The translations under genes were made by a program, and so were the position numbers. A stretch of DNA of 64,000 nt, taken from Isurus oxyrinchus. Its lineage: Eukaryota. Position 1 is the first letter of the stretch. Every line of letters starts with the position of its first letter. The stretch covers positions 8,928,001-8,992,000 of the forward strand of contig JANJGN010000035.1 of assembly GCA_026770705.1 (NCBI GenBank), written 5' to 3'. This document shows positions 3,354-59,460 of the stretch, in pieces. The notes below the pieces were generated by a model that saw nothing but the letters and a program-made list of their open reading frames with translations, was not told the DNA's origin and searched no databases.

Positions 3354-3600
3354 CTGCCCACGATACAATTTGACGTAATGCAGAGGGAAAATAATCTAAA
3401 TTGTTATGGCGTCCACAATGTACCCAATTGCAGACCTGTGTCTAAAATTAGACACATATCCACAGGAGGTATTGGAGACAATGGCATGATATTATCATAT
3501 AAACATACAGCTTTGGTAATGTCCTTGTTCACATTGCTGAAATGTATTGTCGCCTTGGGATCTACTTTTAAAGTTGAAATTATATAATGGAGTTTCTGGA
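3354..3600 (+). pseudogene. Degenerate CARD-like exon, half A
   Basis: Acceptor tgtttgttag ends at 3353. 3424-3501 reads PIADLCLKLDTYPQEVLETMA*YYH, matching the half-A pattern. Confidence 0.45.
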
Positions 3601-3653
3601 GTATTTATTGATCCCTCAAGCAATGAAAACAATATGCATGTGTACCATTTCAG

Positions 3654-3990
3654 TGAAAAGGCGTCGACCAACAGGAAAGCATGGATCAAGTATTTTTTTT
3701 CCCGCTCCACGACATACCTGGCACCATTGTCCCTATTGGCAAGTTTTATCATTTCGAACACAGCTACGGAACATCTCACTGATATTATGGAAATGGACAT
3801 GACAAATATTTCACTCATCTGGGCGGTATGGATCTATTATTTGACAGAGAAATGTAGTGCCAGAGTTAGCTCAGTAGTTTGTCCGTGCAATTAGTAGGAT
3901 TGTTTCATAATGTATGCCTCAGTAAATCTTCAATATACGACCTGGAGTTTAGAAGAATAGAAGGTTAAGGTCTCCGCTTTGCAAGGTTAT
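3654..3990 (+). pseudogene. Degenerate CARD-like exon, whole unit
   Basis: Acceptor ccatttcag ends at 3653. Reads IKYFFSRSTTYL...EHLTDIMEMDMTNISLIWAVWIYYLTEKCSARVSSVVCPCN**DCFIMY...TTWSLEE. Confidence 0.5.
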
Positions 3991-4029
3991 GAATGGTCAT
4001 GAAATAATGAATGTTAAATTTTGAGGTCG

Positions 4030-4710
4030 ATGCTTCCCTGCCGGTGTTTTCCGTTAGGTGGGATGGTGGGGATCGGTGACTGAAATAGGATAAATTAACC
4101 ACACATTGTGTTCCCTCTGGCCCGAACTCTCAACGTTTTTCAACAAAGGAGCAGGTCATGGCCTCGGGCAGGCCCACCGCTCTTCCACAGTTGAAGTCCT
4201 TAAGTGGCCAATTAGTAGCTAATTAGGAGCCGCTTCCACCTCAGATTCAAATATTAGGCTGGTGGGAGCATTTCTCCAGTGTGAATGCAGCCCGTAAATC
4301 ATCAGGTTTAGGCCTTGGGCAAAAAGTGGGCGCCACTTTCTGAAGCCGCCTTCTAACATTGGATGCAACACCCGCTAACTTGTGTTCCAGTGGATTTTCT
4401 ATTACCGTATTCACTTGCCAACCATCTATCTTTTACCGGCATCTCCCCCGACTACCCGATCACCTGCTATGCACTCCTGAAGTCTTCAGTACCCTCTCTG
4501 CCCTGAGGTCCCGAACGCTAAACCTTCCAGCCATTCGTGGGACTTAAGCTCTGAGGTCCTCATGAACTTCTTGTTCTGCGCATTGCAGTTTCTGTCAATG
4601 CAGGGACTGAAGAGCTGTTATCCAAACCACTTGGCTGGCAGCTCAATAAAGCGGATCTTCTGCTCGGGTGAGGGGCATAAGCCCCTCTGCAGGCAATTGA
4701 CGATTGAACA
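4030..4710. mobile_element. GC-richer non-coding repeat, probably a non-autonomous DNA-transposon relic
   Basis: The cttaagtggccaatt-type motif is shared with 24630-24880. No coding potential seen. Confidence 0.4.
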
Positions 4711-6138
4711 TGAAAAATAGAAAAGAACACAATACTTTGCTGCCATCCATACAAATCATTTGCATGTGTTACCTGTTCTTTTCCAAACCAAGGAATCTTC
4801 TGCTTCGCAATTTAAAGGTCTTTGGCTTGTTAGTTTCATTACATACTTTTCTGATCTCACAACTTTAGCCATTGGCACAGAAGCACCATAGACATCCTGT
4901 TTTATATACTTTCTTTTACATCAACAATCGCAGTAAATAGGTTTTCCTACACCATTACCACAAATTGTGGTGCGTTGTTGTCCTAATCACATCTGTAGTT
5001 CTGCAATAAAAGCAGCATTGTGAAATACAGTTACCGACATGAAACCATCTTGAACTGCCCATTTACTCCGAAAACCCCCTCCCCTTCTCTGCGCACCTTA
5101 CATGGCAAGTAACCAGATGCAACTTATATTATTTTGCATGCTAGACTTCCGACATTCAAGACCCTACATAGGCATTCCAGGTGAAAAAACAATTAATTTG
5201 AACTTTAAATATAACTCTCCGTTACAAGCCACTCTCGTATATTTTGTGCTCACATCTGGTCTGTTCAACAACTGGAGAACAAACCTGAATTGGTTCCAGG
5301 CTTTCTGAACACGTCCATTCAGTTTGCAAAAGTGACGTTGAGCTTCCAGTTTTCTGTGATTTCATGTTCTATCCTGGTCGCCCGTTGAATGTGTCATCGA
5401 TGGCATACACTGTCCTCCTGCTTCCAAATATATGTTCAGCAACTGCATCCGATCATGCTATTAAGCAATTTACATGGTTCCCAACATAGCATCGAGATTT
5501 ATATTTTCACATCATAAACTCAACCTCAGTACTTTGGAATAGGAACTGTAGTAATTATTGTGGCTTTTCCACTAACACTACCTCTGAACCCATTGTTTGC
5601 TAAGCTAGCGGTATTCCATCATCACCTCATTTCAACCTGCACCATCATCATATTTGCCAATTTTTCTTTCCTGCCACAACTTCCCACAGATCAATGCTTT
5701 TGGATTCCCCTGCCACCACATCCTCCCTTCAGTACAAGCATAAAGTTTGTCAAATAAATAAAAGTTTCCAGTTCTGTGAGAGGATACTTAAATCAATATT
5801 CTCTCACCGCAAATGCCACTGATGTCCGGACTGCTTTCAGCATTTCATATTTTCACCATGTATTGCAATTAAACTGGAACTGTTTCAGCACACAATGTTC
5901 AAGGACCTTTGTTCTGTCTGTCCTCCGTATAGCGCTTATCTGTTAATGTGTGCAGCACTGTGATGTAATTACCCCTGGCGTGTTTAGTAGCTCAATATCG
6001 TTGGAGCACCATTCTGTGGAAGAGGCATGGCGTCACTAAGCAGCACTGGCCTAAGCTGAGGGGAGTTGATCTGAATGTTAAATGTAAATTAACAGAGGTT
6101 ATTTTAGTTTATGCATGACATATCTTGTACATTTGCAG

Positions 6139-6290
6139 GAAAATAAAAACATTTCGATCTGCAAATTTGGAAAGATACGCTGTCGCTAAATCTTACTGAA
6201 TGTGAACTGAGAGTGTTTATTCGGACAGTTTGTAGGAATCTGACCTTTATACGTGCCATCTAGTTTTCCTGGAGTGCTTTGTTGTTTGAA
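6139..6290 (+). pseudogene. Degenerate CARD-like exon, half B
   Basis: Acceptor acatttgcag ends at 6138. Phase-0 reading is ENKNISICKFGKIRCR*ILLNVN*E...VGI*PLY...FP. Truncated by the SINE at 6291. Confidence 0.5.
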
Positions 6291-6590: not shown

Positions 6591-6665
6591 CTTTGGACTG
6601 TGTAAATGCCGATATATTCTCTACCAAATCCATATTTTACCCGATATGGTAACACTTGGTTGCAG

Positions 6666-9610: not shown

Positions 9611-9619
9611 AACAGCCTA

Positions 9620-14430: not shown

Positions 14431-16154
14431 GGTGGTGGCACAGGGGTATACACTCAGGAAACAGTTATCTGGCAGCCAAGCACATCGAATGTGGACCACA
14501 TGAATTCTCATATGATCAGGTGAAACGACTTTGAGGAAACTTATGTTGGCTGCTGCCAGTCGTGAAATGGTGGTGGAGGTTACAAAAATGCCCCATCTCC
14601 AATGATGGAGGAGCGTAGCAGGCCGGTACAAAATACAACGCTGAATCATTTGCCACCATCTGCAACCAGAAGAGCCAAATTGATAATTACTCTCGACCCC
14701 TTCATGACGTCACCAGCTTCTCAGCTGGCAGTCAATAGCAAATGAGATTCAATGCACCTGATTGTAAAAGGCAGGTGAAAAAAATTGATGCACCAAATGT
14801 TTAGAGCCCTGAAAATATTCTGGCAGTATTACTGAAAAATTCTGCTCCAGATATTATCCAAGTTTTTTTTTTCAATAGATTTTATATCACTGGAACCACC
14901 CAGCTACATGACGAACTGTGAAGATATCACCTGCCCTCAAGAAAAAAATACAAAATTCAACTCAGATAATGATAACACTGTCAGTCCACTCTCGATCATC
15001 GGCAAGTCGTTGACAGTGCTCTCAGCTAACTCGTACTCAGGGTTAATCTTTTAACTCACGTTCAGTTTGTGAACCAGGGCGATGGTCTCCAATGCAGGAT
15101 TCATACCCATCTCAAAGGAAGGCAGTTGTGGTTGGTGGAGCTGATTCCTTTCAATTCCAGGACCTCACTGTCAGAGGTTCCCAGGGTAGTGTCCCATATC
15201 CAATTAACTCCCAATACTTCGTCAATATCGTTCACTTTATTACAAGATCTGAGTGATGATGATATCCAATGATTGCACATTATTCAATACGTTTATCCAT
15301 ATCGTAGACACTGATGCAGTCCAGGTCCATATGCATGAAGTCGTGGACAACATTCAGGCTTGTGCAATTAACATTCGCATCACACAAGGGTAGACAATGG
15401 CCATTTCCAACAAGTGAGAAGACAACTATATCCCCTTGACATTCAATGGCATTAGAACCGCTGAGCCCATACTATCGACATTCTTGGAGTTACAATTGAT
15501 CAGAAACTGAACACGAATATCCATATAAATGCAGCTGAAACAAAAAGAATTTTGAAGATGCAAAACCGCAGAAAACTTACTCACCGCCTGGCGCCACAAT
15601 GACTATCAACCATTCAAAAGTTTCAAGTCAGGAATGTGTTGGAATGCCATCCAATTGCCTGAATGAGCGCAGCTCCAACAACACTCAAAAACCTGAAATA
15701 TCGCGGAAATAGAGGCCCTCTTAGTTGGGACGCCGTCAACCACCTGAAACAATGATGCCCTCCACCACCTATGCACAGTGGCAACATGGTAAGATGTACT
15801 GTGTCAACACTTCAAAAATCTCTAGACAGTCCCCTGCAAACTCAATACACCTACCACTTAGATGCAGAAAGGCAGCAGATGCATGGGAACACCACCAGCT
15901 GCAAGTCATTGCCCAAGCCACGTGCCATCTTGACTTCGAGCTACATTGCCTCCCTTCACTGTCGTTGAGCAAAATCCTGGAAATCCCTCCGTAACGACAC
16001 AGTGGATGTAGCTACACCACACGGGAAGCATCGGTTAAAGATAATGGCTCAACTGTACCTTCGCAATGGCAATTAGGGATACGAAATATAAACACTTACC
16101 TAGCCAGCGACGGCCATATCTCCTGAAAGAACAAAACAAAAAACGAAATTAAAA

Positions 16155-17489: not shown

Positions 17490-19990
17490 ATAGTCATCTC
17501 TGGAATACTCCCAGTGCCACGTTATAGCGAGCTCAAAAATAGGAGAAGAGTGCAGATGAATGCATGGCTTAAGAATGTTGCAGGCGGGAGGGTTTCAGAT
17601 CATGTGGACAATTTCAAGGGATGGTGGTACTCCTACAGGTGGGACAGTCTACATCTGAACCTGAGCGGAACTATTATCCTCGCAGGCGGGTTTTCTGATG
17701 CTATTGGGAGGAGTTTAACCTAATTTGGCAGGAGGAGGGGATATAGAATGTTAGCAGAATCGGCACACATCATAATACACTAAACAATCAAGTCCGAGGG
17801 AGTACAGATGCATTAAGTTTCTTGGGGGTACGGCAAGGCTTCTTTAGTCCCGGACATATTACAGGTAAAACTGATGAGTCAAGTGTATGCATTGACAGAT
17901 GGAATTGTGATATAGTAGCAATCAATGAGACGTCGTTGAGAAGGACAAGATTAGCAGCTCAACTTTCCATGATATATAAACTTCAGGCGAGGCAGGGGAG
18001 GCTGAGGGTGGGCAAGGATAAACAAGGAGGAGTCATTGCATATTAGTTATGGAGTCATTTGCTGCACTGAGGAGGGATGATATCTTGAAGCGGGCATCAA
18101 ATGAAGCTTTGTGGGTAGAGCTTAGGAAAAAAAAAAGGGCAGACACTTTCTTGGGTGTTTTTTAGAGAACCCCAGATAGGAAGCATGAAATGCAGGATGA
18201 AGTATATGCACATTTGTGGACGTGTGAAAAAACAATAACAATAGGTTAGTTGTGTTCAGTGATTTCACCGTTCCCAACAATATGTTGGATAGACATATTG
18301 TTAAGGGCTTGGATGGAGTGAATTTCTCGAAATGTGTACAGGGGAACTTTTTTTTGTTTATATGTATAGTGTCCAAGAACAGATGGCGCAGCGCTGATCC
18401 TAATTCTGGGGAATGAACTGGGAGAGTTGGCAGCGGTGTCGGGGGAGCATGTTAGTGATAGCAGAAAGTTAAGTTTGTTATGTATCAAGCAATAGACAAG
18501 TTGCATAAAAAATGTTTTGGATTGCGGGAGTGCGGAATTTAGTGTAATTAGGCAGCTAAAGGCCAAGTTAGACTGGGAACAGCTACTTGTGGGGAAATCT
18601 ACAGAAGAGCAGTGGGGATTTTCAAAAAGGAAATGGTGAGAGTACAGGCTCGACATGTTACATTCAGGGTGATAGGAAGGAATAACAAGCCCATTGAACC
18701 AGAGATATTTGAAGCAGGAAACATCGACCTTTAGGAGGTTAAAGGGGATCATACTAGTGGAAACATTAGTGGAGAACAGAAAGTGGAGGGTGGAGCTAAG
18801 AAATTAATTCGGAGTGCAAAGTGGTGATATGATAAAAAGCTCTGGATTTTAAAAGTAGAGAAAATCCGAAGATATTCTATAAGTATATAACTGGGAAGAG
18901 GATAATCAGGGAAAGAGTACGGCCGATTGGTGACAAAGTGGGAAGTCCTTGGGTGGAGCCAGAGGACATTGGCAGAGATTTGGACGAATATTTCTCATCC
19001 ATTCTTGTTCAAGAGAATGGGGATGAAGGTATCGAAATCGGGGTGCGAGAATGTGTGGTTCTTGAGCAAATTGATGCAGGCCTTGACAAGGTACTGGAAG
19101 TGATGGCAGGTTTAATACTGAACAAATCTCCAGATCCTGCTGATTTGTGCCCCAGGCTGCTGAGGGAGGAAAGGGAGGAGATCTCAGGGGCTCTGACTCA
19201 AATTTTTCATTCCATAATGGCCACGGGGGAGTTGCCAGAGAACTGGAGATTGTGGTTCCGATATTTAAGGAAGGTTGTAGAGGCAAGCCAAGCATCTGCA
19301 GAGCAGTGAGCCTCACGTCAGTGGTGGGGAAAATATTGGAGATAAGTCTGAACAAGAGAAACTATCTCCATTTGGAGAGGCACGGTTTGTTGAGGAATTG
19401 TGAGCATAGCTTTATCAGAGGGAGGTCATGCCTAACAGATTTGATTGTTCTTTATGAGGGGTTGACCAGGTGTGTAGATGAGGGTAGTGCTGTTGATGTA
19501 GTTTATGTGGATTTCAGTAAATCCTTCTACAGGTTTCCACATGGGACACTTATAATGACGCCAAATGCATTTGGGATACAGGGCAATAAGATAAGGTGGA
19601 TAAAATGGCTTACTTGTAGGAGACAGAGGGTATGACATATGGATGCTTTAGTGACTGGAAGCCAGTGTTCAGTGGCATACCACAAGGATTTGTTCTCTGT
19701 CCCCCATTATTTGTTAATTATATAAACGACAGGTTTAGGGGGGATGTGAGGAAACACCTTTTTACCCAAGGGGTGGTGACGGTCTGGAATGCGTTGCCTG
19801 GGAGGCTGGCTGAGGCGGGTTGCCTCACATGTTTTAAAAAGCACCTGTATGAACAGTTGGCACGTCATAACATACAAAGCTACCGGCCAATTGATGGCAA
19901 ATTGGATTAGTTCAGCAGGTTAGTTGTTTATTACAAGTCGGTGCATACTGGATGGGCCGAAGGGCCTCTTCTGCACCTTGTGATTCTGTG
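17490..19990 (+). mobile_element. CR1 LINE: ORF1 esterase C-terminus, ORF2 EN-RT with an internal deletion, and 3' tail
   Basis: VISGILPVPR...MNAWL...DSLHLN (SGNH-like ORF1); KSPDPADLCPRLLRE; VSLTSVVGKILE; VDVVYVDFSK; GIPQG; WNALP; tail gatgggccgaagggcctcttctgcac. Confidence 0.92.
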
Positions 19991-25915: not shown

Positions 25916-28192
25916 TTAAAGCTCCATCATCGGGTCCGAATGGACATAGCTGCTAGAATCTGTCTGTGGCAGGCGGAGAGGGTTCCAGCAGGAGGTATTC
26001 ACGTATGTCAACTCATCCTCACCAACCTGCATGCGACAGAAGCATCCATCCATGACAGTATCGTTAGGAGTGACAACCACATAGTCATTGTGGAGATGAA
26101 GCCCCGCCTTCACATTGAGGTTATGCTCCAACGTGTTGCCTGGCACTACCACCTTGCTAATGTGATTGATTTGGAGCAGCTCTAGCAAGTAAATTCAGGG
26201 GACTCTTAAGCCACTATGGGCTATTAGCAGCAGGGGAATTGCACTCTAACACAACCTGTAAACTCATGCTCCAGCAGATCCCACACTTTACCAATAACAT
26301 CGAGTGAGGGGATCAACACTGCTTCATTGAGGAGCGCAGGGTGGCATGCCAAGAGCAGCACAAGCCGTACCTAACATAGCTAAGTGATCCACTAGCAAAC
26401 GGGTCAGATTTAAGCACTCCGCTCTTGTCACATCCAGTGGACCCTTAAACAACTCACTGGAGGAGGAGGGCCCACATCTGTCATCATCCTGAATGATAGG
26501 ACAGCCTCGCACAATAATGCAATAGATCAGAATGAAGCATTCGCTAGAAAATGAAACTAAAAGCCTCGTGTGGATGATCAATCCTGCCTCCTCTGCAGGT
26601 CCCCAACATCACAGATGTCAGTATTCTGCGAATTCGATTCACCCCACGGGATAAGAGGAAACAGCTGAAGGCACAGGATACTACAAACAATATGGGCCCT
26701 GACAAAATTCCCTGATTAGTACCGAAGGTATCTTCTCCAGAAATTGCAGCGCCCCTAGCCAAGCTGTTCCTGTACAGCTACAACACTGGCATCAACCTAG
26801 CTATCCGGAGAATTACCTTTGAATGTCTGGTGCACAATAAGCAGGACAAATCGAAACGGCCAGTTGCAGTCCCATCAGTCCTCCCTCGATTGTCAGAAAT
26901 GTAATGGAATGCGTCCACAAAAGTACTACTAAGTGACACTTGTTGCACAATTTGCTGTTCACTGATGCCCAGTTTGTGTTCCACCATGGCCACTTAGCTC
27001 CTTACCTCATTACATCGTTGTTTCACAAATGTAAAAACTAACTGATCTCTCGAGGTGAGTTGAGAGCTGTAGTCCTTGATATCAGGGCAGCATTTGAACA
27101 AATATGGCATCAATGAGCCCGAGAAAAACTGTAACCAATAAGAATCAGGGTGAAAACACTTCACTAGATGGAGTCATACCTTGCATAAAAGAAGATGGTT
27201 GTGGCTCTTGCAGGACAATCACTTAAGCGCCAGTAGATAACAGCAGGAATTTCTGAGGCTAATGTCCTAGGCCCAACCATCTTCAGCTGCTTCATCAAAG
27301 AGCATCCTTCCATAATAATGTCAGAATTGGGGATGTTCGCTCTTGGATGCACGATGTTCAGCACGATTCCCAACTCGTCAGCTACTGAAGCAGTTCATAT
27401 CCAAAAGCAGCAAGAGCTGCCCAATATCCAGGCTTTGTCTGACAAGTGGCAAGAAACATTTTCACCACACAAGTTTTGGTAATGACCATCTCCAATTGTT
27501 TAAAATCCAAAAATCTCCCCTTGTTGTTCAATTGTACTATCATCACTATCAACCTCCTGGGAGCTATCATTGGCCGGAGACTTAACTCAATAGCTGTATA
27601 AATATTACAGCTACAGGAGCAGCGCAGAAGTGTCAAATTGTGCATCAAGTAACTCACCTCCAGACTCCCCAAAGCCTGTGCGCCATCCAGAAATTTCAGG
27701 TCAGGTGTGTGATGGAATAATCACCACTTGCCTGTATAAGTGTACCTCCCACAACACAGAGGAAACTGGACAGGACAAAACAACACGCTTCTTTCGCACC
27801 ACTGCCACAACAATGAGCTCCCTACACACCCGACATACATTTGCAACAGAAATCTACAATGAATTCACCAAGGCTACTTCAAGAGCACCTTGCATATCCA
27901 CCAGATCTACCATCCAGAAGGACAGAATATAGATAGGCAGCAACTGCTTGTGGAAACCATTACCTGTATATACCCCGCCAAGTAACTCACCATCCTGACT
28001 GAAATATATATCGCTGTTCCTTCACTGTCTTTGGGGGAAAGAACTCCTCGAACTCCATTCTCAACAGCAATGTGAACTGCAGCGGTTCAAGACGGAGTTC
28101 ATATTCACCTTCTCAAGGGAAACTGGGGATGTGCAATAAAAATGCTGGCCTAGTCAGCGAAGCCCACACCCAGTGACCGAATAAAGAGAAAA
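25916..28192 (+). mobile_element. LINE-B (EN C-terminus, RT, 3' tail) nested in CR1
   Basis: SIVRSDNHIV (EN), GPDKIP, and VLGPTIFSCFI-like RT motifs, plus the tail aatgctggcctagtcagcgaagcccacacc. Confidence 0.88.
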
Positions 28193-38940: not shown

Positions 38941-38944
38941 ACGC

Positions 38945-40223: not shown

Positions 40224-40658
40224 ACACGCATTCAATGCTTATATTTCCAATTCTAAATATTGTCCAAATTGCTCTCTATCTCCTGTCTAGATTACTATAA
40301 ACAGCCTCTCAAAGCAGATTTTTCATTTAATCTAGTGAAATGGGTTTTCATGTGCCTTTTATTTCCAAATTATATCTTTAACTCTACTGTATTATGCACA
40401 TCATTGCCAATGGTAAAGTTCGGTTTGTGTGTGTGTTTGGGTGCGGAAGTGGGAGTGGGGTGGGGAGATGAGGGGCGGGGTTGTAGGTGGCGCCAGAAGG
40501 CGGTGTAAGTTGAGTGGACAGACGCTATTCTGGATTCTCCCGGTTTCGGATGGATTCAGGACCTGCCTCATTGCCGTACCCGTCGTGGACTTAATTGTTT
40601 TGTGGTTAACACCTGCCTTCAGCTTAAAACGAAAAATCAATAGCTCGATTGAATAATG
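40224..40658 (+). pseudogene. Degenerate CARD-like unit: half A 40224-40412, half B 40487-40658, 74-bp intron
   Basis: Both exons have AG/GT boundaries. Half A reads DTHSMLIFPILNIVQIALYLLSR/YYKQPLKADFSFNLVKWVFMCLLFPNYIFNS. Half B reads GVS*VDRRYSGFSRFRMDS/...LIVLW. Confidence 0.65.
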
Positions 40659-40874
40659 GTAATTGCCTTTTGGATAAAGGAACACGTATAAAATACTCGG
40701 TCCTATGAAGCTATAATTTTACTGTGGAACATTTGTGTTCATTTATAAAATCTTCACAGTGTTCTAATGGGCCTGATTCGTTAACACTATTTTTAAACCT
40801 CCACATTTGATGGGTAAACTGCTGAATATTTACACATTTTTTGATTGTTTATTTCACTTTTCAATGATTCGCAG

Positions 40875-41877
40875 AATGCTGCTGTAATGTGATACGCTGT
40901 TCTTCGGATACAGTTTGGGCACTACAATGGTATCATTGAGTTAAGATAGATGTCAGGTCCACGTGATTCTCTTCATTTTAGAAGAAGATACCCTGGGCAA
41001 AGTCCGTTTATACCCCACGTCATTCCACAGGCAGCAGTCAATAATTTATAGTGCGGGGTAATCCTCGATCTCTGTCATAACCTGCATCCTTGAAACCCTC
41101 AGAGATCTCGAAGTTCCTCACATTCTGTCGCCTTTCCGATTTCCAAATTTTTGTGCCCCAACAATGACAAATTATTTTTTTTATCTCTGATGAATTATCA
41201 CAGTTCTGAAGAAGTAATGTGCTTCCCGCCTCCTCAGATGCTTCCCAATCTGCTGGGTGCTGTCATTATGTTTATGATAGATAGAAGGCCGTTCTCTGGA
41301 ATGCCTATGCACGCAACTTTAGAATTTAATCGGCAAACATCTCCAAATTTCCATTGCTATACATGCATTTTTGTCATTGGACCAAAAGTGTGGTTACCTA
41401 TTAAAATTACTTTGTGCATCTTGGTGATAAATTGTGCTAGATAATTTCTCTTAAGAAGCATATGTCGGAGTTTTCATGTTTTTAAAGCGAGGTAATAGTG
41501 CAGTGTTTTTTTTTTTGCATTCGACTTATATTCGATTTCTCTTCTTCGAAGCCATTATTTTCTGCAGTAGCATCCGACATGTAGTTTTTTAAACATCACT
41601 ATACGAAAGAAAGGGATAAATAGATCAATGGTTCTTTTTCAATTTGTGCATTGCATGATTTACTACCGTTGCAGTATGTGTTAATGCAATCAGAATCCTA
41701 GCTGAAAGTCTGCCCAGATGGACGTTGCACGAATGATTATCGATACACTTCGAGTCAAGGGAGCTCACAGTGAAAGAACATTGTGGGCGCTACTTGAAAA
41801 GCTGCAGGAAAGCAAGTGTAAAGGGACATGACCAGAGATGAATAGGTCAGGCGCATGGACAGGAAGTTACCTGAAAG
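40875..41877 (+). pseudogene. Degenerate CARD-like unit: half A 40875-41057, half B 41675-41877
   Basis: Canonical splice sites. Half A reads NVIRCSSDTVWALQ/MVSL...ILEEDTLGKVRL. Half B reads KSAQMDVARMIIDTLRVKGAHSERTLWALLEKLQES, a typical CARD D-x-A-R-x-(L/I)-I-D-x-x-x-x-K-G motif, and ends in phase 1 at G|gtaggc. Confidence 0.75.
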
Positions 41878-41954
41878 GTAGGCGGCATCCAAAACAAACT
41901 TGACAGAGGCAATTTTCCACATTAAAACAAGAACCTTATTTAGGAGGACATTAG

Positions 41955-42063
41955 TGTTATTGTTGCTATTATTATTATTACTGCCATTAGCAGTAATAGT
42001 AGTAGTATTACTATTGTTATTATTTTTATTATTATTATTATTGTCATCATCATCATCATCACT
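41955..42063. repeat. Compound (TAT)n/(TAG)n/(CAT)n microsatellite
   Basis: Directly visible in the sequence. Confidence 0.9.
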
Positions 42064-42109
42064 ATTCTAATATGTCTATGAGTCTAAGAGAATCAAGCAC
42101 CATTTTCTT

Positions 42110-42415
42110 CCCAATCCAAAAATTACCTTGAAGTTAATGCCCACCAGGTCTCTTGCTCCACGGCTGGCGATTTGTATCCTGCAGTTACCTGGGGTTAATA
42201 TCTCGGTTTCTCTCCCTCTTATCCGCCTCTCTATCTCGCTTTCCACTTTTAAGATGCCTCGTAAAGCCTACTTCTTTGGTGAATCTATTGATCACCTGGT
42301 CTAATGCCTCCATCTGCGACTAGATCTCGTATATCTTATTAATGCTGCTGTCAAGCTCTTTTGGAATATTTCATTACATTAGACGCACTTTAGAACTATC
42401 ACTTGTTGTTAATAA
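42110..42415 (+). mobile_element. L2-like LINE 3' end
   Basis: ccgcctctctatctcgctttccacttttaagatgcctcgtaaagcc...ttacattagacgcacttta...ttgttgtt tail. Confidence 0.55.
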
Positions 42416-42476
42416 TGGTGTAGTTAATACCTATAGTTTATTTATAGAGGGTGTTCCGTTGTAAATTCTAATTCAG

Positions 42477-42940
42477 TGGGTTGCAATATATCTGCTACAT
42501 AATTTGCGGGCAAATCAATTCTAATGACATTATTGGAACTAAATAGCCAGCAGGGGCACAGCAGGCAATCGAAAGTATTGACGCTGCAATAGTGTTGGTG
42601 CGCATTGCAAATTCATCACATACGCTATTCTATAGCTGAAGCATTAATAATATCCCAATAAGTGGTAATAATAATTCAAATTCAGTAATGACAGGTTAAG
42701 TATGTTTCGTAACAGGCTGTTTGCATTGAATGATTTAGCTGTCACGCCTTAGCAAAGTTTTAGAACGAGATTGCATCTGAAGCAGACAAAGTTATTCTGT
42801 GAATCTCCCCCTGGTTAAACCGTCAGTATATTGACAACCGGGCGTTTTCAATAATCATAGTGCAATGCTGTAATAGCCCTTGTTGCCGCTTCTCTTACCC
42901 ATGACGTTTGTCCTCATGCCTCATAAAACATTTATGGTGC
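42477..42940 (+). pseudogene. Degenerate CARD-like unit: half A 42477-42664, half B 42764-~42940, 99-bp intron
   Basis: The half-A exon is 188 nt, consistent with phase 1 to 0, and reads IYLLHNLRANQF/AQQAIESIDAAIVL. Half B reads NEIASEADK.../THDVCPH. Confidence 0.55.
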
Positions 42941-43087
42941 TGACTTGCATAATTTACACTTCTTTTTTAAATGATCCATGGCAATGCAAAGCGCTATTTT
43001 TGATGCCAGATGTATTTTAATTAAAAATGTTAATCCTTAGGCCTTTGCACTTGCGCTTTTTAGTGCAAAGTGCAAATAACAATTAAG

Positions 43088-43370
43088 AGTCATAGAATAA
43101 CAGTACAAAAAAGGCTCTTTGGTCCATCGAGTCTGCAGAGACATGTGCGCAACACCTGCCCTACCTACTTAATCTTTTTTTTTGCAATTGGTCCATATCC
43201 TTGAATATTATGACGTGCCAAGTGCTCATCCAGGTGCTTCTGTAAAGTATTTGAGGCAATCCGCTTCCAGAACCCTCCCTGGCAAAGCATTCAAGACCCT
43301 CAGCACACTCTGTGTAAAAGCATTTTTCCTCACATAGCCCCTAAACGTCCTGTTCTGCACCTTGAGCTTT
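43088..43370 (-). mobile_element. CR1 3' end
   Basis: catagaa...ggctctttggtccatcgagtctgc is the reverse complement of the CR1 tail. Confidence 0.85.
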
Positions 43371-43551
43371 CAAAGAAAACAATTTATTTACATTATTTAT
43401 AGTCTCTTTGGAAAAACCAGCAGAAGACATTAATATCCCTAACTCTCTAATATCATCTAGTAAATGCATTGATTACAAATATGTTGGATTACTTTATTGA
43501 CGCTTTTATGAATGCTGCACTCGACTTTGAACTACCCATTTTAAACTTCAG

Positions 43552-43930
43552 GTTGCCATCAGCTTTACTTGAATCCAAAATACACACGCTTCTTACCCAA
43601 AACAATAATCACGCAATTCGTCTTAAAGATATACAAGCATCGCCAGTTCATTTCTACATTCTGCGACCTATCCAGATTGCTGCATTCCCGTTCCTTCCAC
43701 CACTTCCTGTTCCCTGGAAAACAGCAGTTCTTTTTCTCCAGGCTCCAAAGAAAACGCCCAGCCACCAGCCCTGTAGTGTTTCTATTGCCACAAATGTCTC
43801 TTTTTCTTCCTTATTTAAATTACACTCGGTATTTTCCAAAGCTTGTCCGGGTCTTAACAACTCGATGAAAATGAGGCCGCATTATTTGATCTTCCCTACA
43901 TGGAGAGGCGCCACTAGTCATTTCATCGCT
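43552..43930 (+). pseudogene. Degenerate CARD-like unit
   Basis: Acceptor ends at 43551. Reads ESKIHTLLTQNNNHAIRL/KIYKHRQFISTFCDLSRL, then SSLFKLHSVFSKACPGLNNSMKMR. This accounts for ORFs 43469..43939 and 43569..43868. Confidence 0.6.
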
Positions 43931-44015
43931 ATAAAATAAATTCAAACATCAATGCTCAGGCTCCTCCCAATTATATTAATTGTACTTTAATTTGTCCCCT
44001 GTTTAACTTTTGCAG

Positions 44016-44370
44016 CACATACAAATACTAAAATCTTACAAATGCTGGCGGTGTTCAGGGATGTTCAGTTGCATAGAATTACTACTGTGTTCCGTGATGC
44101 ATAAGAACAGTCAATTCAAGAAATCGTTGAAGCATTTAGTGAGTCGCTCGCACGGGCAAAAGTGTTGACTGAAGCAGATCATAAGTTAGGTTACATTTTG
44201 CTGGACCTACTTTAGGTGTTAAGTGATTCATACGGATGGCTGCATAGACTGAATATTTTCGATGCAATTTAGAGACAGAAACTCTACCAAAGCCTTATAG
44301 ATTTTTTGATCTGTAATTGCTGCCTTGTGCCATAACAGCCATTATTTAAATTGCATTTATGAGACCTTCT
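44016..44370 (+). pseudogene. CARD-like exon, best-preserved whole unit
   Basis: Acceptor aacttttgcag (44015). Phase-1 reading is HTNTKILQMLAVFRDVQLHRITTVFRDA*EQSIQEIVEAFSESLARAKVLTEADHK...NIFDAI*R/NSTKAL*IF*SVIAALCHNSHYLNCIYE. Confidence 0.78.
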
Positions 44371-46220
44371 TGTGAAAAAGTTTTTATTTCCTGCAATTGT
44401 CAATAAATGAATTGAAAGTACATGAACAGTGCGCTTCATGTTATAACATAAACTCTATTTGTCAGGTTCCAAAGCTCTACTAAATGGCATGTATGACTCC
44501 CAGTATTGACCTACATTTTCGATTATCGGGAACACCCCAGGATGTCATGGAATGAAATGTTGTGAAAGTCAAAATTGCAAATTTTGCAACATCCACCAAC
44601 AGCACAGCAGCATTTACGTGCCTGTGAATAGATTAAAAAAAGAGTGAAAGATGCCGACTTCTTATATGAAGCGAATAAATTCACTGCAGGAAACAAAGTA
44701 TACTGTCTAAATCAATGCACAATCAACTCCTCGAATTTCCAGCCCTTCTCGTACAAACAATTAAACGTTTCTGTTAAGAAGCAAATTGATAGAAATCTAC
44801 CAGTTGAAACAATTTATAAAAAATGTCCCCTTAAATATGTAACACTACACTTTCATGACGACGTCGATTCTCTGTCAGACTCTTTTGTGTCACTGACCAA
44901 TACAACATTCACTGAAATTCGCTTGATCATTTCCAATTTGTGCCATTCAACTTTCCTGTAGTGCCTTGCGATCTTTCCAAATTATTAATCTTATTATTGG
45001 CGACAATGAATTATTTTCGTAGAATCCTTTTCCTCCAATCACACGCTTCTCCAATTTTTAAAAGAGCTCATAAGATATACTATACTCCTCACGACTATTA
45101 ATTGATCAGTTATGGCAAGCGTTTAACTTGAAAATATTCTGTGTACCCCAAATAAGTAACCATTGTCCAAGACTGCACTGATTTAGTGATATGATATTGC
45201 TGTTCTGTGTAATTAAAAGGTCATATTTTGAATACCTTTTCCGAGCTCTCTTAGTAAAATAAATTAATCTGGAATTGTTAATAAATGAATTAAAGGGAAA
45301 AGAACAGAGTAACATATTCTCGAGCACAAATATGATAGATTTATGTGTGTACTACTGTTCTAAGAATGCTGCTTATAGGTTATCGTTTGGAATTGCTAAG
45401 TAAACATTGTACACTAAAGGGAATCCTTCGTATTTTTAAAGTGAACCAACACATGCTAAAATTAAAAAAAATAGTTTTTAAAATACAGTTTCACCAAGTC
45501 AATGCTCCAAAGGAGAAACGCGACACACGAGTGTGAACTGAGTAAAACTTGCAAGGGAGAGACGTTCAGCGGCAATACAATCGCCTGAATCGAGCCACAT
45601 TAATCTCTTGAGGGCAGCTGTATAATTACATGCAATTTATCATAGCCATACCTCTTGCATTTAAGTCAATTTCATCCCTCTTAATTTGGAAATGGTTCAC
45701 GTGACTCCAGATTATGGATGATATAGAACTTTTATGGCATCCATAAGTAGAAGAGTTAACAAATATTTCATGATTACGAGGGATGACCCAAGGTATTTGA
45801 ATGAATAATTTTAAAAGGCAACATTGAAATCGTATGAATCATGAGCCAACAACATCACAAGTGGGATTCCACGACGTTGTTCAAACAAGCAACACGGACA
45901 AACATCCCTACGTGGAAAAGAAACTGTCCAAAAGAAAGTTAAGTGTCAAAATTAATACGTGTTTGAAGAACAGAACTGCATCTATTCTCTCTCAGAAAGC
46001 CCTGTTTTTTACAATAAACCACAGACTGAAGTAGGCACTGCCAGCTGCACAAATTAATAAAGACGTCTTCCAAACTCACATCTTTCATCTTAATGAAAAT
46101 GTCTTCCATACTATATAATAGTCAACTAGTTTAATTTGACGGCCTGAACAAAGACTTGTTAAGATTTTTTTTCAAAGCATCACTCATAATTATAGCATTA
46201 CTTTGTCGATTTACCTTCCA

Positions 46221-46617
46221 GCAATTGCATAAAAGCAGCCACAAACCACACCCAACCCCATTTTGTCAGCAATTTATTCCGTGAGATCTCATTTCTGATA
46301 ATTTGCAATTATCCTCACTGAGAAATGTCACTATTTGCTATGACAGTGATTTCATCCAGCCTTGGTTCAGCCAAAGTAATTTGTGCCTCTCACATTCTGG
46401 ACTTATGTGACATTCTTGCCACCAGCATTAGTTGCCTTGTGTTCAAACACCAAATCAGCGCAATCAGGCAGAAAATGTAGCACATATTCAGAAGGTATTT
46501 CGGAATGTGGGGAAGATAAATTGGTTCTGGTTTGAAGTCTTCCATCAGAACAAAAAAGCTTTAGAAATTAAATATTATCAACCATGTGAAGAGTTAGACA
46601 ATAGCGTCAGAGCAGGG
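46221..46617 (+). pseudogene. Degenerate CARD-like exon, whole unit
   Basis: Acceptor ccttccag and donor gtatga (46618). Reads ISDNLQLSSLRNVTICYDSDFIQ...NQRNQAENVAHIQKVFRNVGKINWFWFE. Confidence 0.5.
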
Positions 46618-47749: not shown

Positions 47750-48550
47750 TTTAGAGGATACGTGTACAATTTACAACAAACAAAATATACATAAACTTAA
47801 AGCACAGAAGGTCCACAGGCGAATTAAAAATAACAGCATTGTTATAAGGACGTAAATGTGATAGAATAAGGACAAGTTGTTGAAGGCAAATTAGAGCCAC
47901 ACACTAGTACATTTTGAAATAATGATGGGTAATGAAGCAATAGCAGAGGCAATAAACAAAGACGGCGTATCTGCCTTCATGAAATTTGACACAAAATAAA
48001 AATCAGGAAAGAATAAGAAACCATGGATTGACTGACGACAAACATGAAATAAGTCGGTAAAATTTCAGTAATATTGCTGAACCAATGAAAGTGATTTAGC
48101 ACTGATAACTACCTTGAAAGTGATGTCATGCATTCTTGATATTTCAAGTAGGTTGATGCCGATATGGTTGGTGCATATCGTTTTGATATTCCAAACTTTC
48201 CAATATTCCAGAATGTTTCCCAAGGATTGAAAGGTGAGAAACATGACATTGCTAATTAAGAAGGAGAGAAAGCGAGATTCTAGATGATAGTCTAGGAGCG
48301 TTAATGATTAGTGACAAAATGTTACAATCTATCAATGGAAATTAGTTATGAAAACAACACAGACAATCATTATATTTTATTCATTGTCAACAATAACATT
48401 ACCAAGAAATTTGCGTTTGACAAATGTAGGTTTGATGAAGTAACCATTGAATGGCGAATTGGGAACAAAAAGATGTAGCACATTTCGATATTTTTTTTTC
48501 GAAAGGTGCAGATGATGTTGTTCCAAGTAAGAGACCATTGAAAAACAATT
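47750..48550 (+). mobile_element. Old CR1 ORF2 fragment
   Basis: Decayed pre-RT and RT motifs (FQTFQYSRMFPKD*KV; DVAHFDI). Confidence 0.55.
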
Positions 48551-48559
48551 GGGATCCCG

Positions 48560-48727
48560 CACAACCCACCCCCCATCCCCACCTAAATCCAACTTATATA
48601 TCACCCCTTCCTTGGATTCACCTAGTTCTATCGAAGGTTCAGGAGGACTCGAAAGTCAACTCTTTTCTTCTCCGCCGATGCTGCCAGACCTGCTCAGTTT
48701 TTCCAGGTAATTCTGTTTTTTTGTTTT
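48560..48727 (+). mobile_element. Penelope 3' pseudo-LTR fragment
   Basis: Matches 32640-32800 and 61450-61610. Confidence 0.85.
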
Positions 48728-49199
48728 CTATCTACATTGTTTGCTCTGTCATCGGAAGAAAACACATTCCCCGACACGAATTTCATTTTGAACACATTTG
48801 TTTTCCTTGTACTCATTGTAAGATTTCAGAATGCTTCGTGAAATGTTCCCTCTTTTAAAAATTATAGGTCTGTAGTTTCGGCTGCATTTTTGTGTACGTT
48901 GGTATTATATTTGTTAATGTTCAAATGCTGGTATCGTTCTAGGGAAAATTTGACTTGATATCAATTTCATGCAATGGCGTAACACTACTGTCTCTCGCAG
49001 ACGGCAGGTTCCTTACCAGACGTTGGTGGCATTCCGGCATCCGGGTGGCATAGGGGAGGACCCGATGATACGTTATTTGCTGCAAAATAGCAACAAAGGC
49101 TTTGCATAATATCATCCCTTCCAATGCGCTAAAGAATACGCTCCCAAACCAGCATTAATTTCTCCAAAAAGTATTGCCACTGATGATGACTTTGGTTGG

Positions 49200-56660: not shown

Positions 56661-56789
56661 GCAAATTTTAAATCTAAGCTATTCATTGGCATCTCAAACC
56701 TAGCACTTCCAACCCCTTAATGTTTTAAAGCCCCAAACAACCACACTCAGGTTAAGCTTGCACATCTTAAGAAATTCACACACACATAA

Positions 56790-56947
56790 NNNNNNNNNNN
56801 NNNNNNNNNNNNNNNNNNNNNNNNNNNNNNNNNNNNNNNNNNNNNNNNNNNNNNNNNNNNNNNNNNNNNNNNNNNNNNNNNNNNNNNNNNNNNNNNNNNN
56901 NNNNNNNNNNNNNNNNNNNNNNNNNNNNNNNNNNNNNNNNNNNNNNN
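56790..56947. other. Assembly gap (158 N)
   Basis: Run of n. Confidence 1.
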
Positions 56948-56949
56948 CC

Positions 56950-57330
56950 TCGAACAGTTGTGGTGTGAATGTTGTTTGCCGCCTGCCAGCCGTAGCCTAG
57001 ATTGTCCAGGTATTTCTGCATTTGGTAATTGACTTATTGTGTACTGGAGAATACAGGAATGATACTGAAAATTCTGCAACCATCAGCGGGATCCCCACAT
57101 CTCACCATAAGATGCAAGGAAGGTAATTGATGAAGTAGTTGGAAACGGTTGGGCCCAAAACACCACCGTGTGAATCTCCTACAGTGATGTCACGGAAGTT
57201 AAATGATAGACCTCCAAAAACAACGCCCTTCTTCAGTTGTGCTGCATCGGACACCAACTGGTGGAAAGTTTCGCCCTAATCACTATTGACTCCGTTTTTT
57301 TTTTCATGCATTCTTATGCCATGTTAACCC
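56950..57330 (-). mobile_element. LINE-B RT fragment
   Basis: Matches 600-960 and 27200-27450. Confidence 0.7.
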
Positions 57331-57472
57331 ATTGAGATCTCCGTTATCAAGAACCTTTGAAAATCCTGTTATATTGTTTCCACTGCTTGCCCTTTATATA
57401 TCCCTTTCGTTATGTCTTCATCAAATCTCGAATGCATTTTTTAATCATGGTTTCCCTTTTGTACAACCATAG

Positions 57473-58160
57473 TCACTCTGTGTGCCTGTTTATCGCGTTT
57501 GTAAACACAATGTCTTAAACCGTTAGTAAGTTGCCAGCTTTCATGCGGCAATCTTAACAGGCTTTTTCGAAGCAATACCATATTTTTAATAGCAGTATTA
57601 TATTTGCCAGCTCCAAGTCTACCGACAGCTTTCAATAATCTCGATGGAAGAACGTTTTCTTTAGCAGACCTTCTGTTCTCTGAACAACTGATATTCGTCT
57701 TCATTTAAACATTGGTTATCCTGCTTAAGTACGCTATTATGTTACGAAGTATTTTTTCTTGTTTTGTTGAGTATTTTGAAACAAAAAAAAGGATACACCT
57801 TTTCTTATTATTGTAACTTCCGGTCCATTTACTAATGCAAAAATGGTCAACCCCCCTTTATTTCTTTAGCTGATGAATGTACTAAATTGAAATAAAGTAT
57901 ATGAGCATGTAGAATGCTTCTTCTTTTAAATATCACGTTCAAAGACACGCTACCTCGAAGCCTTTTTCAGCAGATTTCCAGGTCTTTTTGCTGTAACTCT
58001 TTGTTGTCCTACACCGAATTTATCTTTCCTGATCAACTTGTGCATTGTCTTTCTATGACGAGGGATATAAGAATTAGCATCACAGGAATAGTCCCTGAAA
58101 GCATTGCCTATGCCAACCACTTGCCAAGCTGCTATATATGAGACTCAAAACCAATACTGG
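57473..58160 (+). pseudogene. Degenerate CARD-like unit: half A 57473-~57680, half B 57971-58160
   Basis: Half A reads LSRL*TQCL..VSCQLSCGNLNRLFRSN. The half-B exon is 190 nt between tttttcag| and G|gtattt (phase 0 to 1) and reads QISRSF...TEFIF...NHLPS. Confidence 0.55.
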
Positions 58161-58795
58161 GTATTTCGCAAATCTATAATTACCCCAAAAAATTATGATT
58201 GCTACATCTATTAATTTGACCGTCATGTGTAGTCATAGATGGATGACAATGCATCATACGAATACAGCATACAAAAATAAGGACAAATGTAGGAAAAATT
58301 TGCTCTTGAGCCTGAATCAGCATTCAGTATGATATTGTGTCATGCATATCAAAATGGCTTTTATGACAGTTCCCAATAATCCTGTGACTCCCTGAGAGAT
58401 CACTAATTATTCTATCTGGACCTAGAATGTACTCACAATGGAGCATGCACTACACGTCGGGTTGGTGAAATTTCAAGACTCACAAGACTCTTTGTGGGAA
58501 AAAAAAATCTCTCATGGCAGTGTATATTATTCAACCCCTATTATTCTTTGGATAGAACAAAACCCGGTGCAGCTTCATATCTGTGCTCTGTTCAAAGTCA
58601 ACAATAATGTTTCTTAGGTTCTCGAGTGAGCATCAATCCTTAAAAAAAAACAGGTTCTGTTTGCATAGTGAGGAGAGTTTCTGAAAAAAAGAATATGATA
58701 TCCCTGGCTACTTGTGATAATTTTATGGTAGAGTAAATGTTTATGCGCATAATAAGGCCAAAAAATTACACTAAAACACATTTATGATTTTGCAG

Positions 58796-59460
58796 AGTAT
58801 GCAGTTATTTAGAAAAAAACTTTCATGAGATCATACTTAACTACCATCATACCTAACCTTCCACTTTTGCTGTTGAGCAATTATCCTTATAGATTTTAAA
58901 ATTAGCATAATTTCAGGAATTATTATCATAGCCTGTTTCTCTTCCCATTGAAGTGGCCGATGAAGCTGAAAGCAACTGGTCCTCCATGTCTAGCCTTGTT
59001 TGCATTGTCTTCCAGAAGTTTTGCCCAGCTATCCTGCTGTCTTCTGGGAGATCTAAGCAACTGTTCCCTCACGAAAATTTCAGTATTTCCTAAAATCTGA
59101 TCCTTCACTTTATTCTCTCAGTTGCCTCAATTACTACTAACAGAAATGCTTTCTTCCAAGGACGGATTACTCGTTCCTTTACTGTGGCTTTTATGTTTGA
59201 AGAAATGTCCTATCGTAACCTTACATACTTAGAGCTTTTATAACCTTGATAAAGCAATCTTTGAACTAAAGCAGATCAAATTAAAACCTCTCTTATTTAT
59301 TATGTGCACTTTTGCTTGAAGTTCCTTTTGTCTAATTAATAATTCAATAGAAGTCCTTATGGTCCGTTTGGCTCTTGGAGTTCTCCTGGACCTTGCTCCA
59401 AGTATCATCGTTAATACCAGAAAAAGCCTGTTTTCCAATACATAAGAAATATGACAGTGG
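58796..59460 (+). pseudogene. Degenerate CARD-like units: whole unit 58796-~59240, next half A from 59351
   Basis: Acceptors end at 58795 and 59350. Reads IPNLPLLLLSNY...FRNYYHSLF.../SKQLFPHENFSIS*NLILHFIL; then LGVLL/CSKYH. Confidence 0.5.

What the first reader, a model, noticed from the sequence alone, without database searches (positions are those of the whole stretch)
3354..59460. Hidden poly-CARD array: about 25 co-oriented, decayed death-fold exon units spanning more than 55 kb
Seen: most non-TE islands, translated on the + strand across stops and indels, give the same two-part pattern behind AG acceptors. Half A is roughly I-x-x-L-L-x-x-C-x-D-Y-Q-L-x-x-(I/V)-T-x-x-(Y/F)-R-x-x-L-x-Q-x-I...S-L-x-L. 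Half B is roughly x-L-x-x-x-G-N...S-R-x-L-I-D-x-V-x-x-K-G...L-W...K-M/L-x-x-x-P. Units support one another: VMRCSNYLYTLNMVV (6666) vs VIRCSSDTVWALQ/MVS (40875); KVTVCY (8239) vs NVTICY (46221); GNSI (8502, 20521); TLW/VLW (41675, 47217, 40487); KMQ/KMR/QMK (56457, 43742, 50968). Knowledge: MDVARMIIDTLRVKGA resembles the CARD motif of caspase-1 (MDKTRALIDSVIPKGA), and from memory the whole unit resembles the N-terminal domain of elasmobranch NLR (NACHT-LRR) proteins. Inference: this is a very large gene or cluster built from tandem, mutually divergent CARD-like domains. Familiar vertebrate proteins carry only 1-2 CARDs, so a 20+ CARD scaffold or decoy would be a new innate-immune architecture, here apparently fossilised.
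Basis: partly seen in the sequence, partly recalled or inferred. Interest (0 to 1): 0.9.

Follow-up and report, generated by a model that had tools for sequence, protein, structure and literature searches.

The report
Two-exon relic of CARD-like gene
Only two neighbouring, broken exons in this shark window come from a little-known gene family built of repeated CARD-like modules. The rest of the proposed 25-unit array over 55 kb looks no different from chance resemblance in transposon-rich DNA.

Summary
The quoted peptides exist, but the about-25-unit array does not hold up. One half-B piece (41706-41828, +) found two real shark proteins among 1.84 billion. These are Cetorhinus maximus LOC144671995 (P0001, 2 units) and Scyliorhinus torazame scyTo_0011946 (P0003, about 3.5 units, called 'CARD domain-containing protein' by UniRef).

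Searched back against the window, these proteins and HMMs built from their six units hit only two places. These are 41721-41855 (E 2.5e-12) and 44021-44185 (E 2.6e-15), both on the + strand and contiguous in P0001. A frameshift-aware profile scan gives 81 and 107 there. The next best + strand scores (28.6, 23.8) equal the minus strand (29.0, 23.5) and shuffles.

The two exons can be joined by an in-phase GT-AG intron. They carry two stops and one frameshift, and no RNA contig was found.

Verdict: an unprocessed pseudogene fragment of a real, uncharacterised family of tandem CARD-like modules. CARD identity is suggestive but below threshold (Pfam 22.9 bits against a 23.9 cut-off), and both fold predictions failed.

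The parts
41675..41877 (+). Exon 'half B' of a CARD-like unit plus linker. It is 203 nt, one short of a multiple of three. The proposed acceptor AG is at 41673-41674 and the donor GT at 41878-41879, both phase 1.
   Evidence: tblastn with P0001 residues 106-150 hits 41721-41855 at 67% identity, E 2.5e-12. The hB HMM gives E 9.2e-14. The frameshift-aware profile score is 81.4, against a background of 29 or less. The upstream frame reads AIRILAESLPR, which matches the family's ...LAES... start. Splice sites were read from the DNA and are inferred; there is no RNA.
41719..41721 (+). Frameshift site: one base is missing relative to the family's spacing.
   Evidence: The frame that reads ...AESLPR ends here, and the frame that reads DVARMIID... 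starts at 41721. P0001 has AESPPR-C-DVSRLIID with one extra codon. The exon length of 203 = 3x68-1 agrees.
41829..41831 (+). In-frame stop TGA inside exon B. P0001 has W at this position.
41878..44015 (+). Proposed intron of 2138 nt, GT...AG, phase 1 at both ends. It joins exon B to exon A in frame.
   Evidence: Read from the DNA. P0001 residues 106-150 and 148-202 are contiguous and map to the two sides. Inferred: no RNA contig covers it.
43168..43399 (-). Retroelement fragment inside the intron.
   Evidence: Fragments 43229-43369(-) and 43168-43290(-) match the RT-like ORF piece 19620-19907(+) at E 2e-11 and 8e-6. 43184-43241 is the only part of 40300-46299 covered by contigs of the four runs laid, at high depth and with loose ends on both sides, as a repeat would be.
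44016..44189 (+). Exon 'half A' of the next CARD-like unit. It is 174 nt (58 codons). The acceptor AG is at 44014-44015 behind a pyrimidine tract, and the proposed donor GT is at 44190-44191, both phase 1.
   Evidence: tblastn with P0001 residues 148-202 hits 44021-44185 at 64% identity, E 2.6e-15. The hA HMM gives E 6.4e-9 and 3.4e-8 for the two pieces either side of the stop. The profile score is 106.9, against a background of 24 or less. DNA.
44102..44104 (+). In-frame stop TAA inside exon A. P0001 has L at this position.

Best explanation
The window holds a two-exon fragment of an unprocessed pseudogene. The fragment is the second-half exon of one CARD-like module (41675-41877) followed, after a 2.1-kb GT-AG intron, by the first-half exon of the next module (44016-44189). 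It belongs to a small, uncharacterised shark family whose predicted proteins string together modules of about 105 aa. Basking shark LOC144671995 has 2 modules plus hydrophobic N- and C-terminal segments; cloudy catshark scyTo_0011946 has about 3.5. Each module appears to be encoded by two exons, and both exons here are phase 1 at both ends, a design that allows modules to be duplicated or lost in frame. This copy is dead: it has two stops and one frameshift, its flanking exons are undetectable, and no transcript was found. They lie among LINE and LTR retroelement debris. In intact relatives I infer that the modules act as homotypic death-fold interaction domains that build or cap CARD signalling filaments. 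This function is inferred, not shown.
For: Shown: phmmer of the 41-aa piece against 1.84 billion representatives gave 4 hits at E<=0.001. Two of them (P0001 3.9e-11, P0003 4.0e-9) are true relatives with 2 and 3 matched stretches. tblastn of P0001 and P0003 against the window hits only 41721-41855 and 44021-44185 with E<0.01. Unit HMMs run against 3345 six-frame fragments make 3 fragments (the two exons) significant; all other hits have E>=0.015, with + and - counts of 178 v 206, 153 v 164 and 100 v 116. The frameshift-aware scan scores 106.9 and 81.4. The next best + scores are 23.8 and 28.6, the best - scores 23.5 and 29.0, and the top score in 20 shuffles averages 24.8+-2.2 and 29.6+-3.5. 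The lesions are shown. The in-phase splice sites are shown. No contig of 4 same-species runs lies on either exon. Retroelement domains occur on the - strand (RVT_1, RNase H, integrase C-terminus, Exo_endo_phos_2) and no death-fold, NACHT or LRR family appears among 150 + and 145 - open fragments of >=62 aa. CARD-likeness of the family rests.
Against: The profile rests on only six units from two predicted proteins, so very divergent or badly decayed units could be missed. At >=24 the half-B profile has 9 other + peaks, against 5 on - and 5.6 in shuffles. It is odd that a B exon and the following A exon survive while the A before and the B after are undetectable. The four runs laid are only guessed to be RNA and are contigs, so their silence is weak evidence. 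The splice sites are inferred from sequence only.
Confidence: 0.85

Rival explanations
1. One reading: about 25 co-oriented, very decayed CARD-like exon units really do lie between 3354 and 59460, but they are too eroded for profile methods to detect.
For: Two units' worth of exons are real and on the + strand. There are slight + strand excesses for [TV]LW (19 v 12) and KM[QR]/QMK (19 v 9), and for half-B profile peaks >=24 (9 v 5). First-reader notes report CARD-like exon arrays at NLR loci 72 kb to 2 Mb away on the same sequence; these are unchecked.
Against: There is no excess over the minus strand or shuffles in any unbiased test. There are no DNA-level copies of either exon. The quoted anchor pairs are of a kind that occurs tens of thousands of times per strand. 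Anything eroded beyond profile detection could not have been recognised reliably by eye either.
Confidence: 0.04
2. The two exons belong to a live gene. On this view the three lesions are assembly errors or one individual's null allele, and the remaining exons are too divergent to recognise or lie outside the window.
For: Both exons have canonical in-phase splice sites and 64-67% identity to P0001. Absence of RNA contigs proves nothing.
Against: There are three independent disabling changes in 377 nt, none in a homopolymer. No neighbouring half A, half B, N-terminal or C-terminal exon was found with P0001 segments. No contig from the 4 runs lies on the exons.
Confidence: 0.07
3. The family's module is not a death fold. 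On this view it is an annexin-repeat-like or otherwise unrelated helical module, and the CARD likeness is a coincidence of helical patterns.
For: The best PDB hit of the P0001+P0003 profile is annexin A8 (E 0.0013; domain i-E 0.049) over half A. Pfam Annexin scores E 0.46 for P0003. P0003 has no Pfam CARD hit. Both AlphaFold models are helical but unusable.
Against: Pfam CARD is the only near-threshold family for P0001 (E 8.5e-5, 2 stretches). The caspase-1 CARD aligns over 14-76 of its 85 residues in two searches. All ten best Atlas hits that carry a Pfam family share a family or clan with the best of them, which is CARD; a third of shuffled proteins also do this. No annexin-type GxGT calcium loop is visible in the unit alignment.
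Confidence: 0.2

Closest known systems
Cetorhinus maximus LOC144671995 (XP_078390056.1, P0001) and Scyliorhinus torazame scyTo_0011946 (GCB66031.1, UniRef100_A0A401NYT5 'CARD domain-containing protein', P0003)
   Same: The same two-part module. Window exon B is 67% identical to P0001 106-150, and exon A is 64% identical to P0001 148-202. The modules are tandem in both proteins.
   Different: Those are open predicted proteins with 2 and about 3.5 modules. The window copy has only half of each of two modules and three disabling lesions. Neither protein is characterised: I found no paper and no further relative of 188-845 aa.
CARD (Pfam PF00619), e.g. caspase-1 CARD (PDB 5fna)
   Same: A length of about 90 aa inside the unit, an all-helical prediction, and the helix 4-5 pattern ...ID..L.KG....LW..L. 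Pfam CARD scores E 8.5e-5 on P0001, and 5fna_A is a weak hit.
   Different: The score is below Pfam's cut-off. The window exons alone match nothing. The unit has an extra N-terminal stretch that looks annexin-repeat-like. The fold is not demonstrated.
Vertebrate tandem-CARD proteins (RIG-I, MDA5 with a CARD pair; NOD2 with two CARDs)
   Same: More than one CARD-type module in a row. The CARD pair of RIG-I and MDA5 is described in passages of PMC8455134. NOD2 is from my own knowledge.
   Different: Those stop at two CARDs, which are attached to helicase or NACHT domains. P0003 has about 3.5 modules and no other recognised domain.
N-terminal peptide-repeat exons of zebrafish NLR-B30.2 genes (Howe et al. 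2016, PMC4852459; passages read)
   Same: Exon-encoded modules that are repeated in variable number and shuffled between immune genes.
   Different: The zebrafish repeats are about 30 aa, are not death folds, and sit in front of NACHT. No NACHT was found in this window.

Membership tests
Shark tandem CARD-like module family (LOC144671995 / scyTo_0011946) | Significant sequence similarity to both halves of the module | tested here: met
   E 2.5e-12 (half B) and 2.6e-15 (half A) by tblastn. HMM E-values are 9e-14, 6e-9 and 3e-8.
Shark tandem CARD-like module family (LOC144671995 / scyTo_0011946) | Consecutive modules in the family order (half B of one, then half A of the next) | tested here: met
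   P0001 106-150 and 148-202 map to 41721-41855 and 44021-44185 on the same strand, and an in-phase GT-AG junction 41877/44016 is available.
Shark tandem CARD-like module family (LOC144671995 / scyTo_0011946) | Open reading frame through complete modules | tested here: not met
   TGA at 41829, TAA at 44102 and a frameshift at about 41719-41721. The partner half-exons and terminal exons are not detectable. It is therefore a pseudogene fragment, not a working member.
Shark tandem CARD-like module family (LOC144671995 / scyTo_0011946) | Same exon-intron structure as the annotated genes | not testable with these tools
CARD / death-fold superfamily (Pfam PF00619) | Profile match at or above Pfam's gathering score | tested here: not met
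   The window exons hit 0 families at E<=10. The relative P0001 scores 22.9 bits against a cut-off of 23.9, E 8.5e-5. P0003 has no CARD hit.
CARD / death-fold superfamily (Pfam PF00619) | Six-helix antiparallel bundle | tested here: inconclusive
   AlphaFold2 models of P0001 and P0003 have mean pLDDT 39.1 and 41.2. They are all-helical but unusable, so I ran no fold search.
CARD / death-fold superfamily (Pfam PF00619) | Homotypic CARD-CARD binding or filament formation | not testable with these tools
   This needs an experiment.
Annexin repeat (Pfam PF00191) | Profile match at or above the gathering score, and a GxGT calcium-binding loop | tested here: not met
   Pfam Annexin scores E 0.46, 11 bits against a cut-off of 25. 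Annexin A8 in PDB scores E 0.0013 over half A only. No GxGT is seen in the six aligned units.
NLR (NACHT-LRR) gene | NACHT or LRR coding sequence in the window | tested here: not met
   No NACHT or LRR family appears among 150 + and 145 - open fragments of >=62 aa at E<=0.01. Shorter fragments were not scanned against Pfam.

The most novel reading that the evidence does not exclude
Sharks may have a modular system in which a CARD-like domain of about 105-125 aa is multiplied in tandem to give proteins with more than two CARDs. Each domain would be encoded by two exons that are phase 1 at both ends. About 3.5 modules are predicted in catshark and 2 in basking shark. The arrays might serve as N-terminal parts of the membrane-anchored or multi-CARD NLR genes that first readers noted 72 kb to 2 Mb away on the same sequence. 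On this reading the window's relic is a casualty of birth-and-death turnover in that system. A scaffold of more than two CARDs would be an innate-immune architecture not described in vertebrates.
Probability: 0.35. Interest if true: 0.65.

Novelty: new member of a known kind. Interest (0 to 1): 0.3.

Why it matters
The object in the window is an ordinary dead gene fragment, and the headline claim of a 20+ CARD gene over 55 kb is not real. The check did bring to light a small shark family of tandem CARD-like modules that is annotated only as 'uncharacterized' or 'hypothetical'. I found no paper on it. If those predictions are expressed proteins, they would extend the known range of CARD multiplicity in vertebrates beyond two. 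Their exon design would also explain how module number can change. That is worth a directed look at intact loci, not at this window.

Tried and rejected
Self-similarity route. All-against-all BLASTP of 2122 six-frame fragments, BLASTP and phmmer of the best pieces, and nhmmer and blastn of the exon DNA found only transposon-type repeats and no second copy of any unit.

Pfam and PDB on the exon pieces alone gave nothing at E<=10. The ESM Atlas on the 41-aa piece gave no usable hit.

P0002 (a tandem-repeat protein) and P0004 (Glyco_transf_88 with N-terminal repeats) I rejected as spurious. Their sequences and Pfam hits are unrelated to the unit.

Searches for more family members gave only P0001 and P0003 themselves: the search for homologous proteins with P0001, with P0003 and with their alignment at E<=10. 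That tool sees only 188-845 aa here, so longer multi-unit or NLR-fused relatives were out of its reach.

I searched for the missing exons with P0001 segments N, 1A, 2B and C. Nothing rose above the minus strand. The tblastn match of the hydrophobic C-terminus at 46156-46239 (E 6.5) I judged to be chance.

Both structure predictions were too poor to use, so I ran no fold search.

RNA: no run holding 40300-46299 was listed, and four same-species runs (contigs, kind only guessed) covered only a repeat at 43184-43241.

The sigma-70 promoter and terminator scan does not apply to a shark genome and I ignored it.

Literature: seven searches found nothing on this family or on vertebrate proteins with more than two CARDs. 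I read passages only of PMC8455134, PMC5662874 and PMC4852459; all other papers I saw as search listings. I did not ask for supplementary files. The NLR and CARD tables of the whale shark paper (PMC8455134), which I did not see, could list relatives.

Every external search used single open pieces.

Full report
WHAT THE WINDOW IS. The window is 64 kb of AT-rich vertebrate DNA with one 158-N gap at 56790-56947 and no ORF longer than 279 aa. Notes of this scan place it in a shark genome. Retroelement debris lies on both strands. Pfam finds RVT_1 at 393-854(-). It also finds integrase C-terminus, RNase H, Exo_endo_phos_2 and a Tf2-type SH3 among the 145 longest minus-strand open fragments. Many fragment pairs match each other in either orientation.

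CHECKING THE OBSERVATION. The claim that about 25 islands share one two-part pattern fails every unbiased test.

Half A at scores >=5/6/7/8 gives 728/101/11/1 against 687/93/6/1. Half B at >=4/5/6/7 gives 133/9/1/0 against 131/9/0/0. One outlier each stands out, at 44033 and 41727.
- All-against-all BLASTP of 2122 six-frame fragments gives the same number of +/+ and -/- pairs at every score (791 v 708 at >=18 bits, 185 v 187 at >=20, 14 v 12 at >=30). All pairs at E<=1e-3 are repeat-type pairs, none at a claimed unit.
- The three best pieces find nothing else in the window by BLASTP, by phmmer (no non-self hit below E=1), or by nhmmer and blastn.
- The short anchors are near chance. GNSI occurs 3 times on + and 1 on -, against a shuffle mean of 0.8. 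[TV]LW occurs 19 v 12 against 12.1+-3.6. KM[QR]/QMK occurs 19 v 9 against 10.9+-3.3.
- Six-residue pairs as good as the two quoted anchor pairs number roughly 26,000-50,000 per strand (sampled estimate).

WHAT IS REAL. The 41-aa open piece 41706-41828(+) hit no Pfam family and no PDB chain at E<=10. HMMER against 1.84 billion representatives returned four proteins at E<=0.001.

- Two are unrelated repeat proteins (P0002, P0004).
- The other two are true relatives. P0001 (E 3.9e-11) is XP_078390056.1, 'uncharacterized protein LOC144671995' of Cetorhinus maximus. P0003 (E 4.0e-9) is GCB66031.1, 'hypothetical protein scyTo_0011946' of Scyliorhinus torazame, which UniRef calls 'CARD domain-containing protein'.
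- Both are built of tandem units of about 105 aa, 2 in P0001 and about 3.5 in P0003. The six units align cleanly with each other. The unit is therefore real, and proteins with several units are predicted in other sharks.

HOW MUCH OF IT IS IN THE WINDOW. Only two places are found.

- tblastn with P0001 and P0003 hits only two places with E<0.01. These are 41721-41855 (P0001 106-150, 67% identity, E 2.5e-12) and 44021-44185 (P0001 148-202, 64% identity, E 2.6e-15), both on the + strand.
- HMMs of half A, half B and the whole unit were built only from the six units of P0001 and P0003. Run against 3345 six-frame fragments of >=12 aa, they make exactly three fragments significant: the half-B piece and the two pieces of half A either side of a stop.
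- The next best hit is on the minus strand (43460-43531, E 0.015). The remaining weak hits split 178 v 206, 153 v 164 and 100 v 116 between + and -.
- I wrote a frameshift- and stop-tolerant profile aligner for this. It scores 106.9 (half A, ending at 44185) and 81.4 (half B, ending at 41822). The next best + strand scores are 23.8 and 28.6. The best minus-strand scores are 23.5 and 29.0. The top score of 20 dinucleotide shuffles averages 24.8+-2.2 and 29.6+-3.5.
- At >=24 the half-B profile has 9 other + peaks, against 5 on - and 5.6 in shuffles. I did not show this small excess to be significant.
- Segments of P0001 for the N-terminus, the first half A, the second half B and the C-terminus find nothing above the minus strand.

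ANATOMY. The two hits are contiguous in P0001, so they are consecutive exons: the half B of one unit and the half A of the next.

- Reading the DNA, exon B can run from 41675 (after AG at 41673-41674) to 41877 (before GT at 41878-41879, context AAAG|GTA).
- Exon A can run from 44016 (after a pyrimidine tract and CAG) to 44189 (TTAG|GTTACA).
- All four boundaries are phase 1, so the 41877/44016 junction is in frame.
- Exon A is 174 nt (58 codons). Exon B is 203 nt, one short of 204.
- That missing base is visible. The frame reading ...AIRILAESLPR, which matches the family's ...LAES... start, ends at 41719-41721, where the DVARMIID frame begins. P0001 has one more codon there.
- There are also in-frame stops at 41829-41831 (TGA) and 44102-44104 (TAA).
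- The 2.1-kb intron holds a retroelement fragment at 43168-43399(-).
- The splice sites are inferred. No run holding 40300-46299 was listed. Contigs of four same-species runs, whose kind is only guessed, lie only on the repeat at 43184-43241.

IS THE UNIT A CARD? The evidence is suggestive, not proven.

- For: Pfam CARD on P0001 scores E 8.5e-5 with two stretches, but 22.9 bits is below the 23.9 cut-off. UniRef names P0003 a CARD protein. Caspase-1 CARD 5fna_A aligns over residues 14-76 of 85 at E 0.39 and 0.47. The nearest named ESM Atlas clusters to P0001 148-262 are CARD families at 0.85-0.87, which count as leads only.
- Against, or open: P0003 has no Pfam CARD hit. The best PDB hit of the two-protein profile is annexin A8 over half A (E 0.0013). 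P0001 alone finds no PDB chain. Both AlphaFold2 runs gave all-helical but unusable models (pLDDT 39.1 and 41.2), so I attempted no fold search.

CONTEXT. No NACHT, LRR or death-fold Pfam family appears among the 150 longest + and 145 longest - open fragments. First-reader notes of this scan, unchecked, describe NLR loci with CARD-like exon arrays 72 kb, 248 kb and about 2 Mb before this window and 639 kb beyond it. If they hold up, the relic lies in an NLR-rich region and the module may be an NLR N-terminal building block. I could not test this.

THE GAP. The N run at 56790-56947 is 12.6 kb beyond the real exons. No supported unit lies near it and no alignment within the window spans it. Continuity and frame across it cannot be judged and do not matter for the verdict. 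I did not fill it or look it up.

VERDICT. The 25-unit poly-CARD array is not there. What is there is a two-exon fragment, broken three times, of an unprocessed pseudogene. It comes from a real but uncharacterised shark family of tandem CARD-like modules. I found no paper on that family or on vertebrate proteins with more than two CARDs. The nearest published parallels are two: the CARD pairs of RIG-I and MDA5 (passages of PMC8455134) and the variable N-terminal peptide-repeat exons of zebrafish NLR-B30.2 genes (passages of PMC4852459). The window itself is of low interest. The family it points to deserves a look at intact loci.

Noticed in passing
P0001 and P0003 (relatives, not the window); window 44016-44137: The first half of the module resembles an annexin repeat: PDB annexin A8 scores E 0.0013 with the two-protein profile, and Pfam Annexin scores E 0.46. 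The second half resembles CARD helices 4-6. This is either a chance helical likeness or a composite module.
   Followed up: partly
P0001 residues 1-17 and about 273-296: The basking shark relative has hydrophobic stretches at both ends around its two CARD-like units. This suggests a membrane-anchored CARD protein, like MAVS or CARD19 by my own recollection. It was not tested.
   Followed up: no
window 31300-32496 and 60435-61334, + strand: Two copies of the same repeat-encoded ORF, 65-81% amino-acid identity over the matched pieces, with a proline-rich stretch. It has no Pfam family, so the element type was not identified.
   Followed up: partly
window 393-866 (-), 2771-3078 (+), 15030-15471, 27167-27479, 57000-57276: Several decayed copies of one reverse-transcriptase-bearing element in both orientations (Pfam RVT_1 E 1.8e-6 for 393-854). 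The copy at 57000-57276 abuts the assembly gap.
   Followed up: partly
window 32561-32970, 36419-36787, 48451-48855, 61474-61767: A short repeat family present at four places in both orientations, partly palindromic at 36419-36787. It was not classified.
   Followed up: no
window 41900-42070 and 34350-34650: Simple-sequence tracts. One is a trinucleotide ATT/TAT-type run just after exon B, which read laying skipped as a repeat at 41951-42072. The other is a G-rich run that encodes poly-Gly on the minus strand.
   Followed up: no
window 44007-44165, + strand, alternative frame: A second frame is open across most of exon A (53 aa). It has no Pfam hit and I take it for chance.
   Followed up: yes
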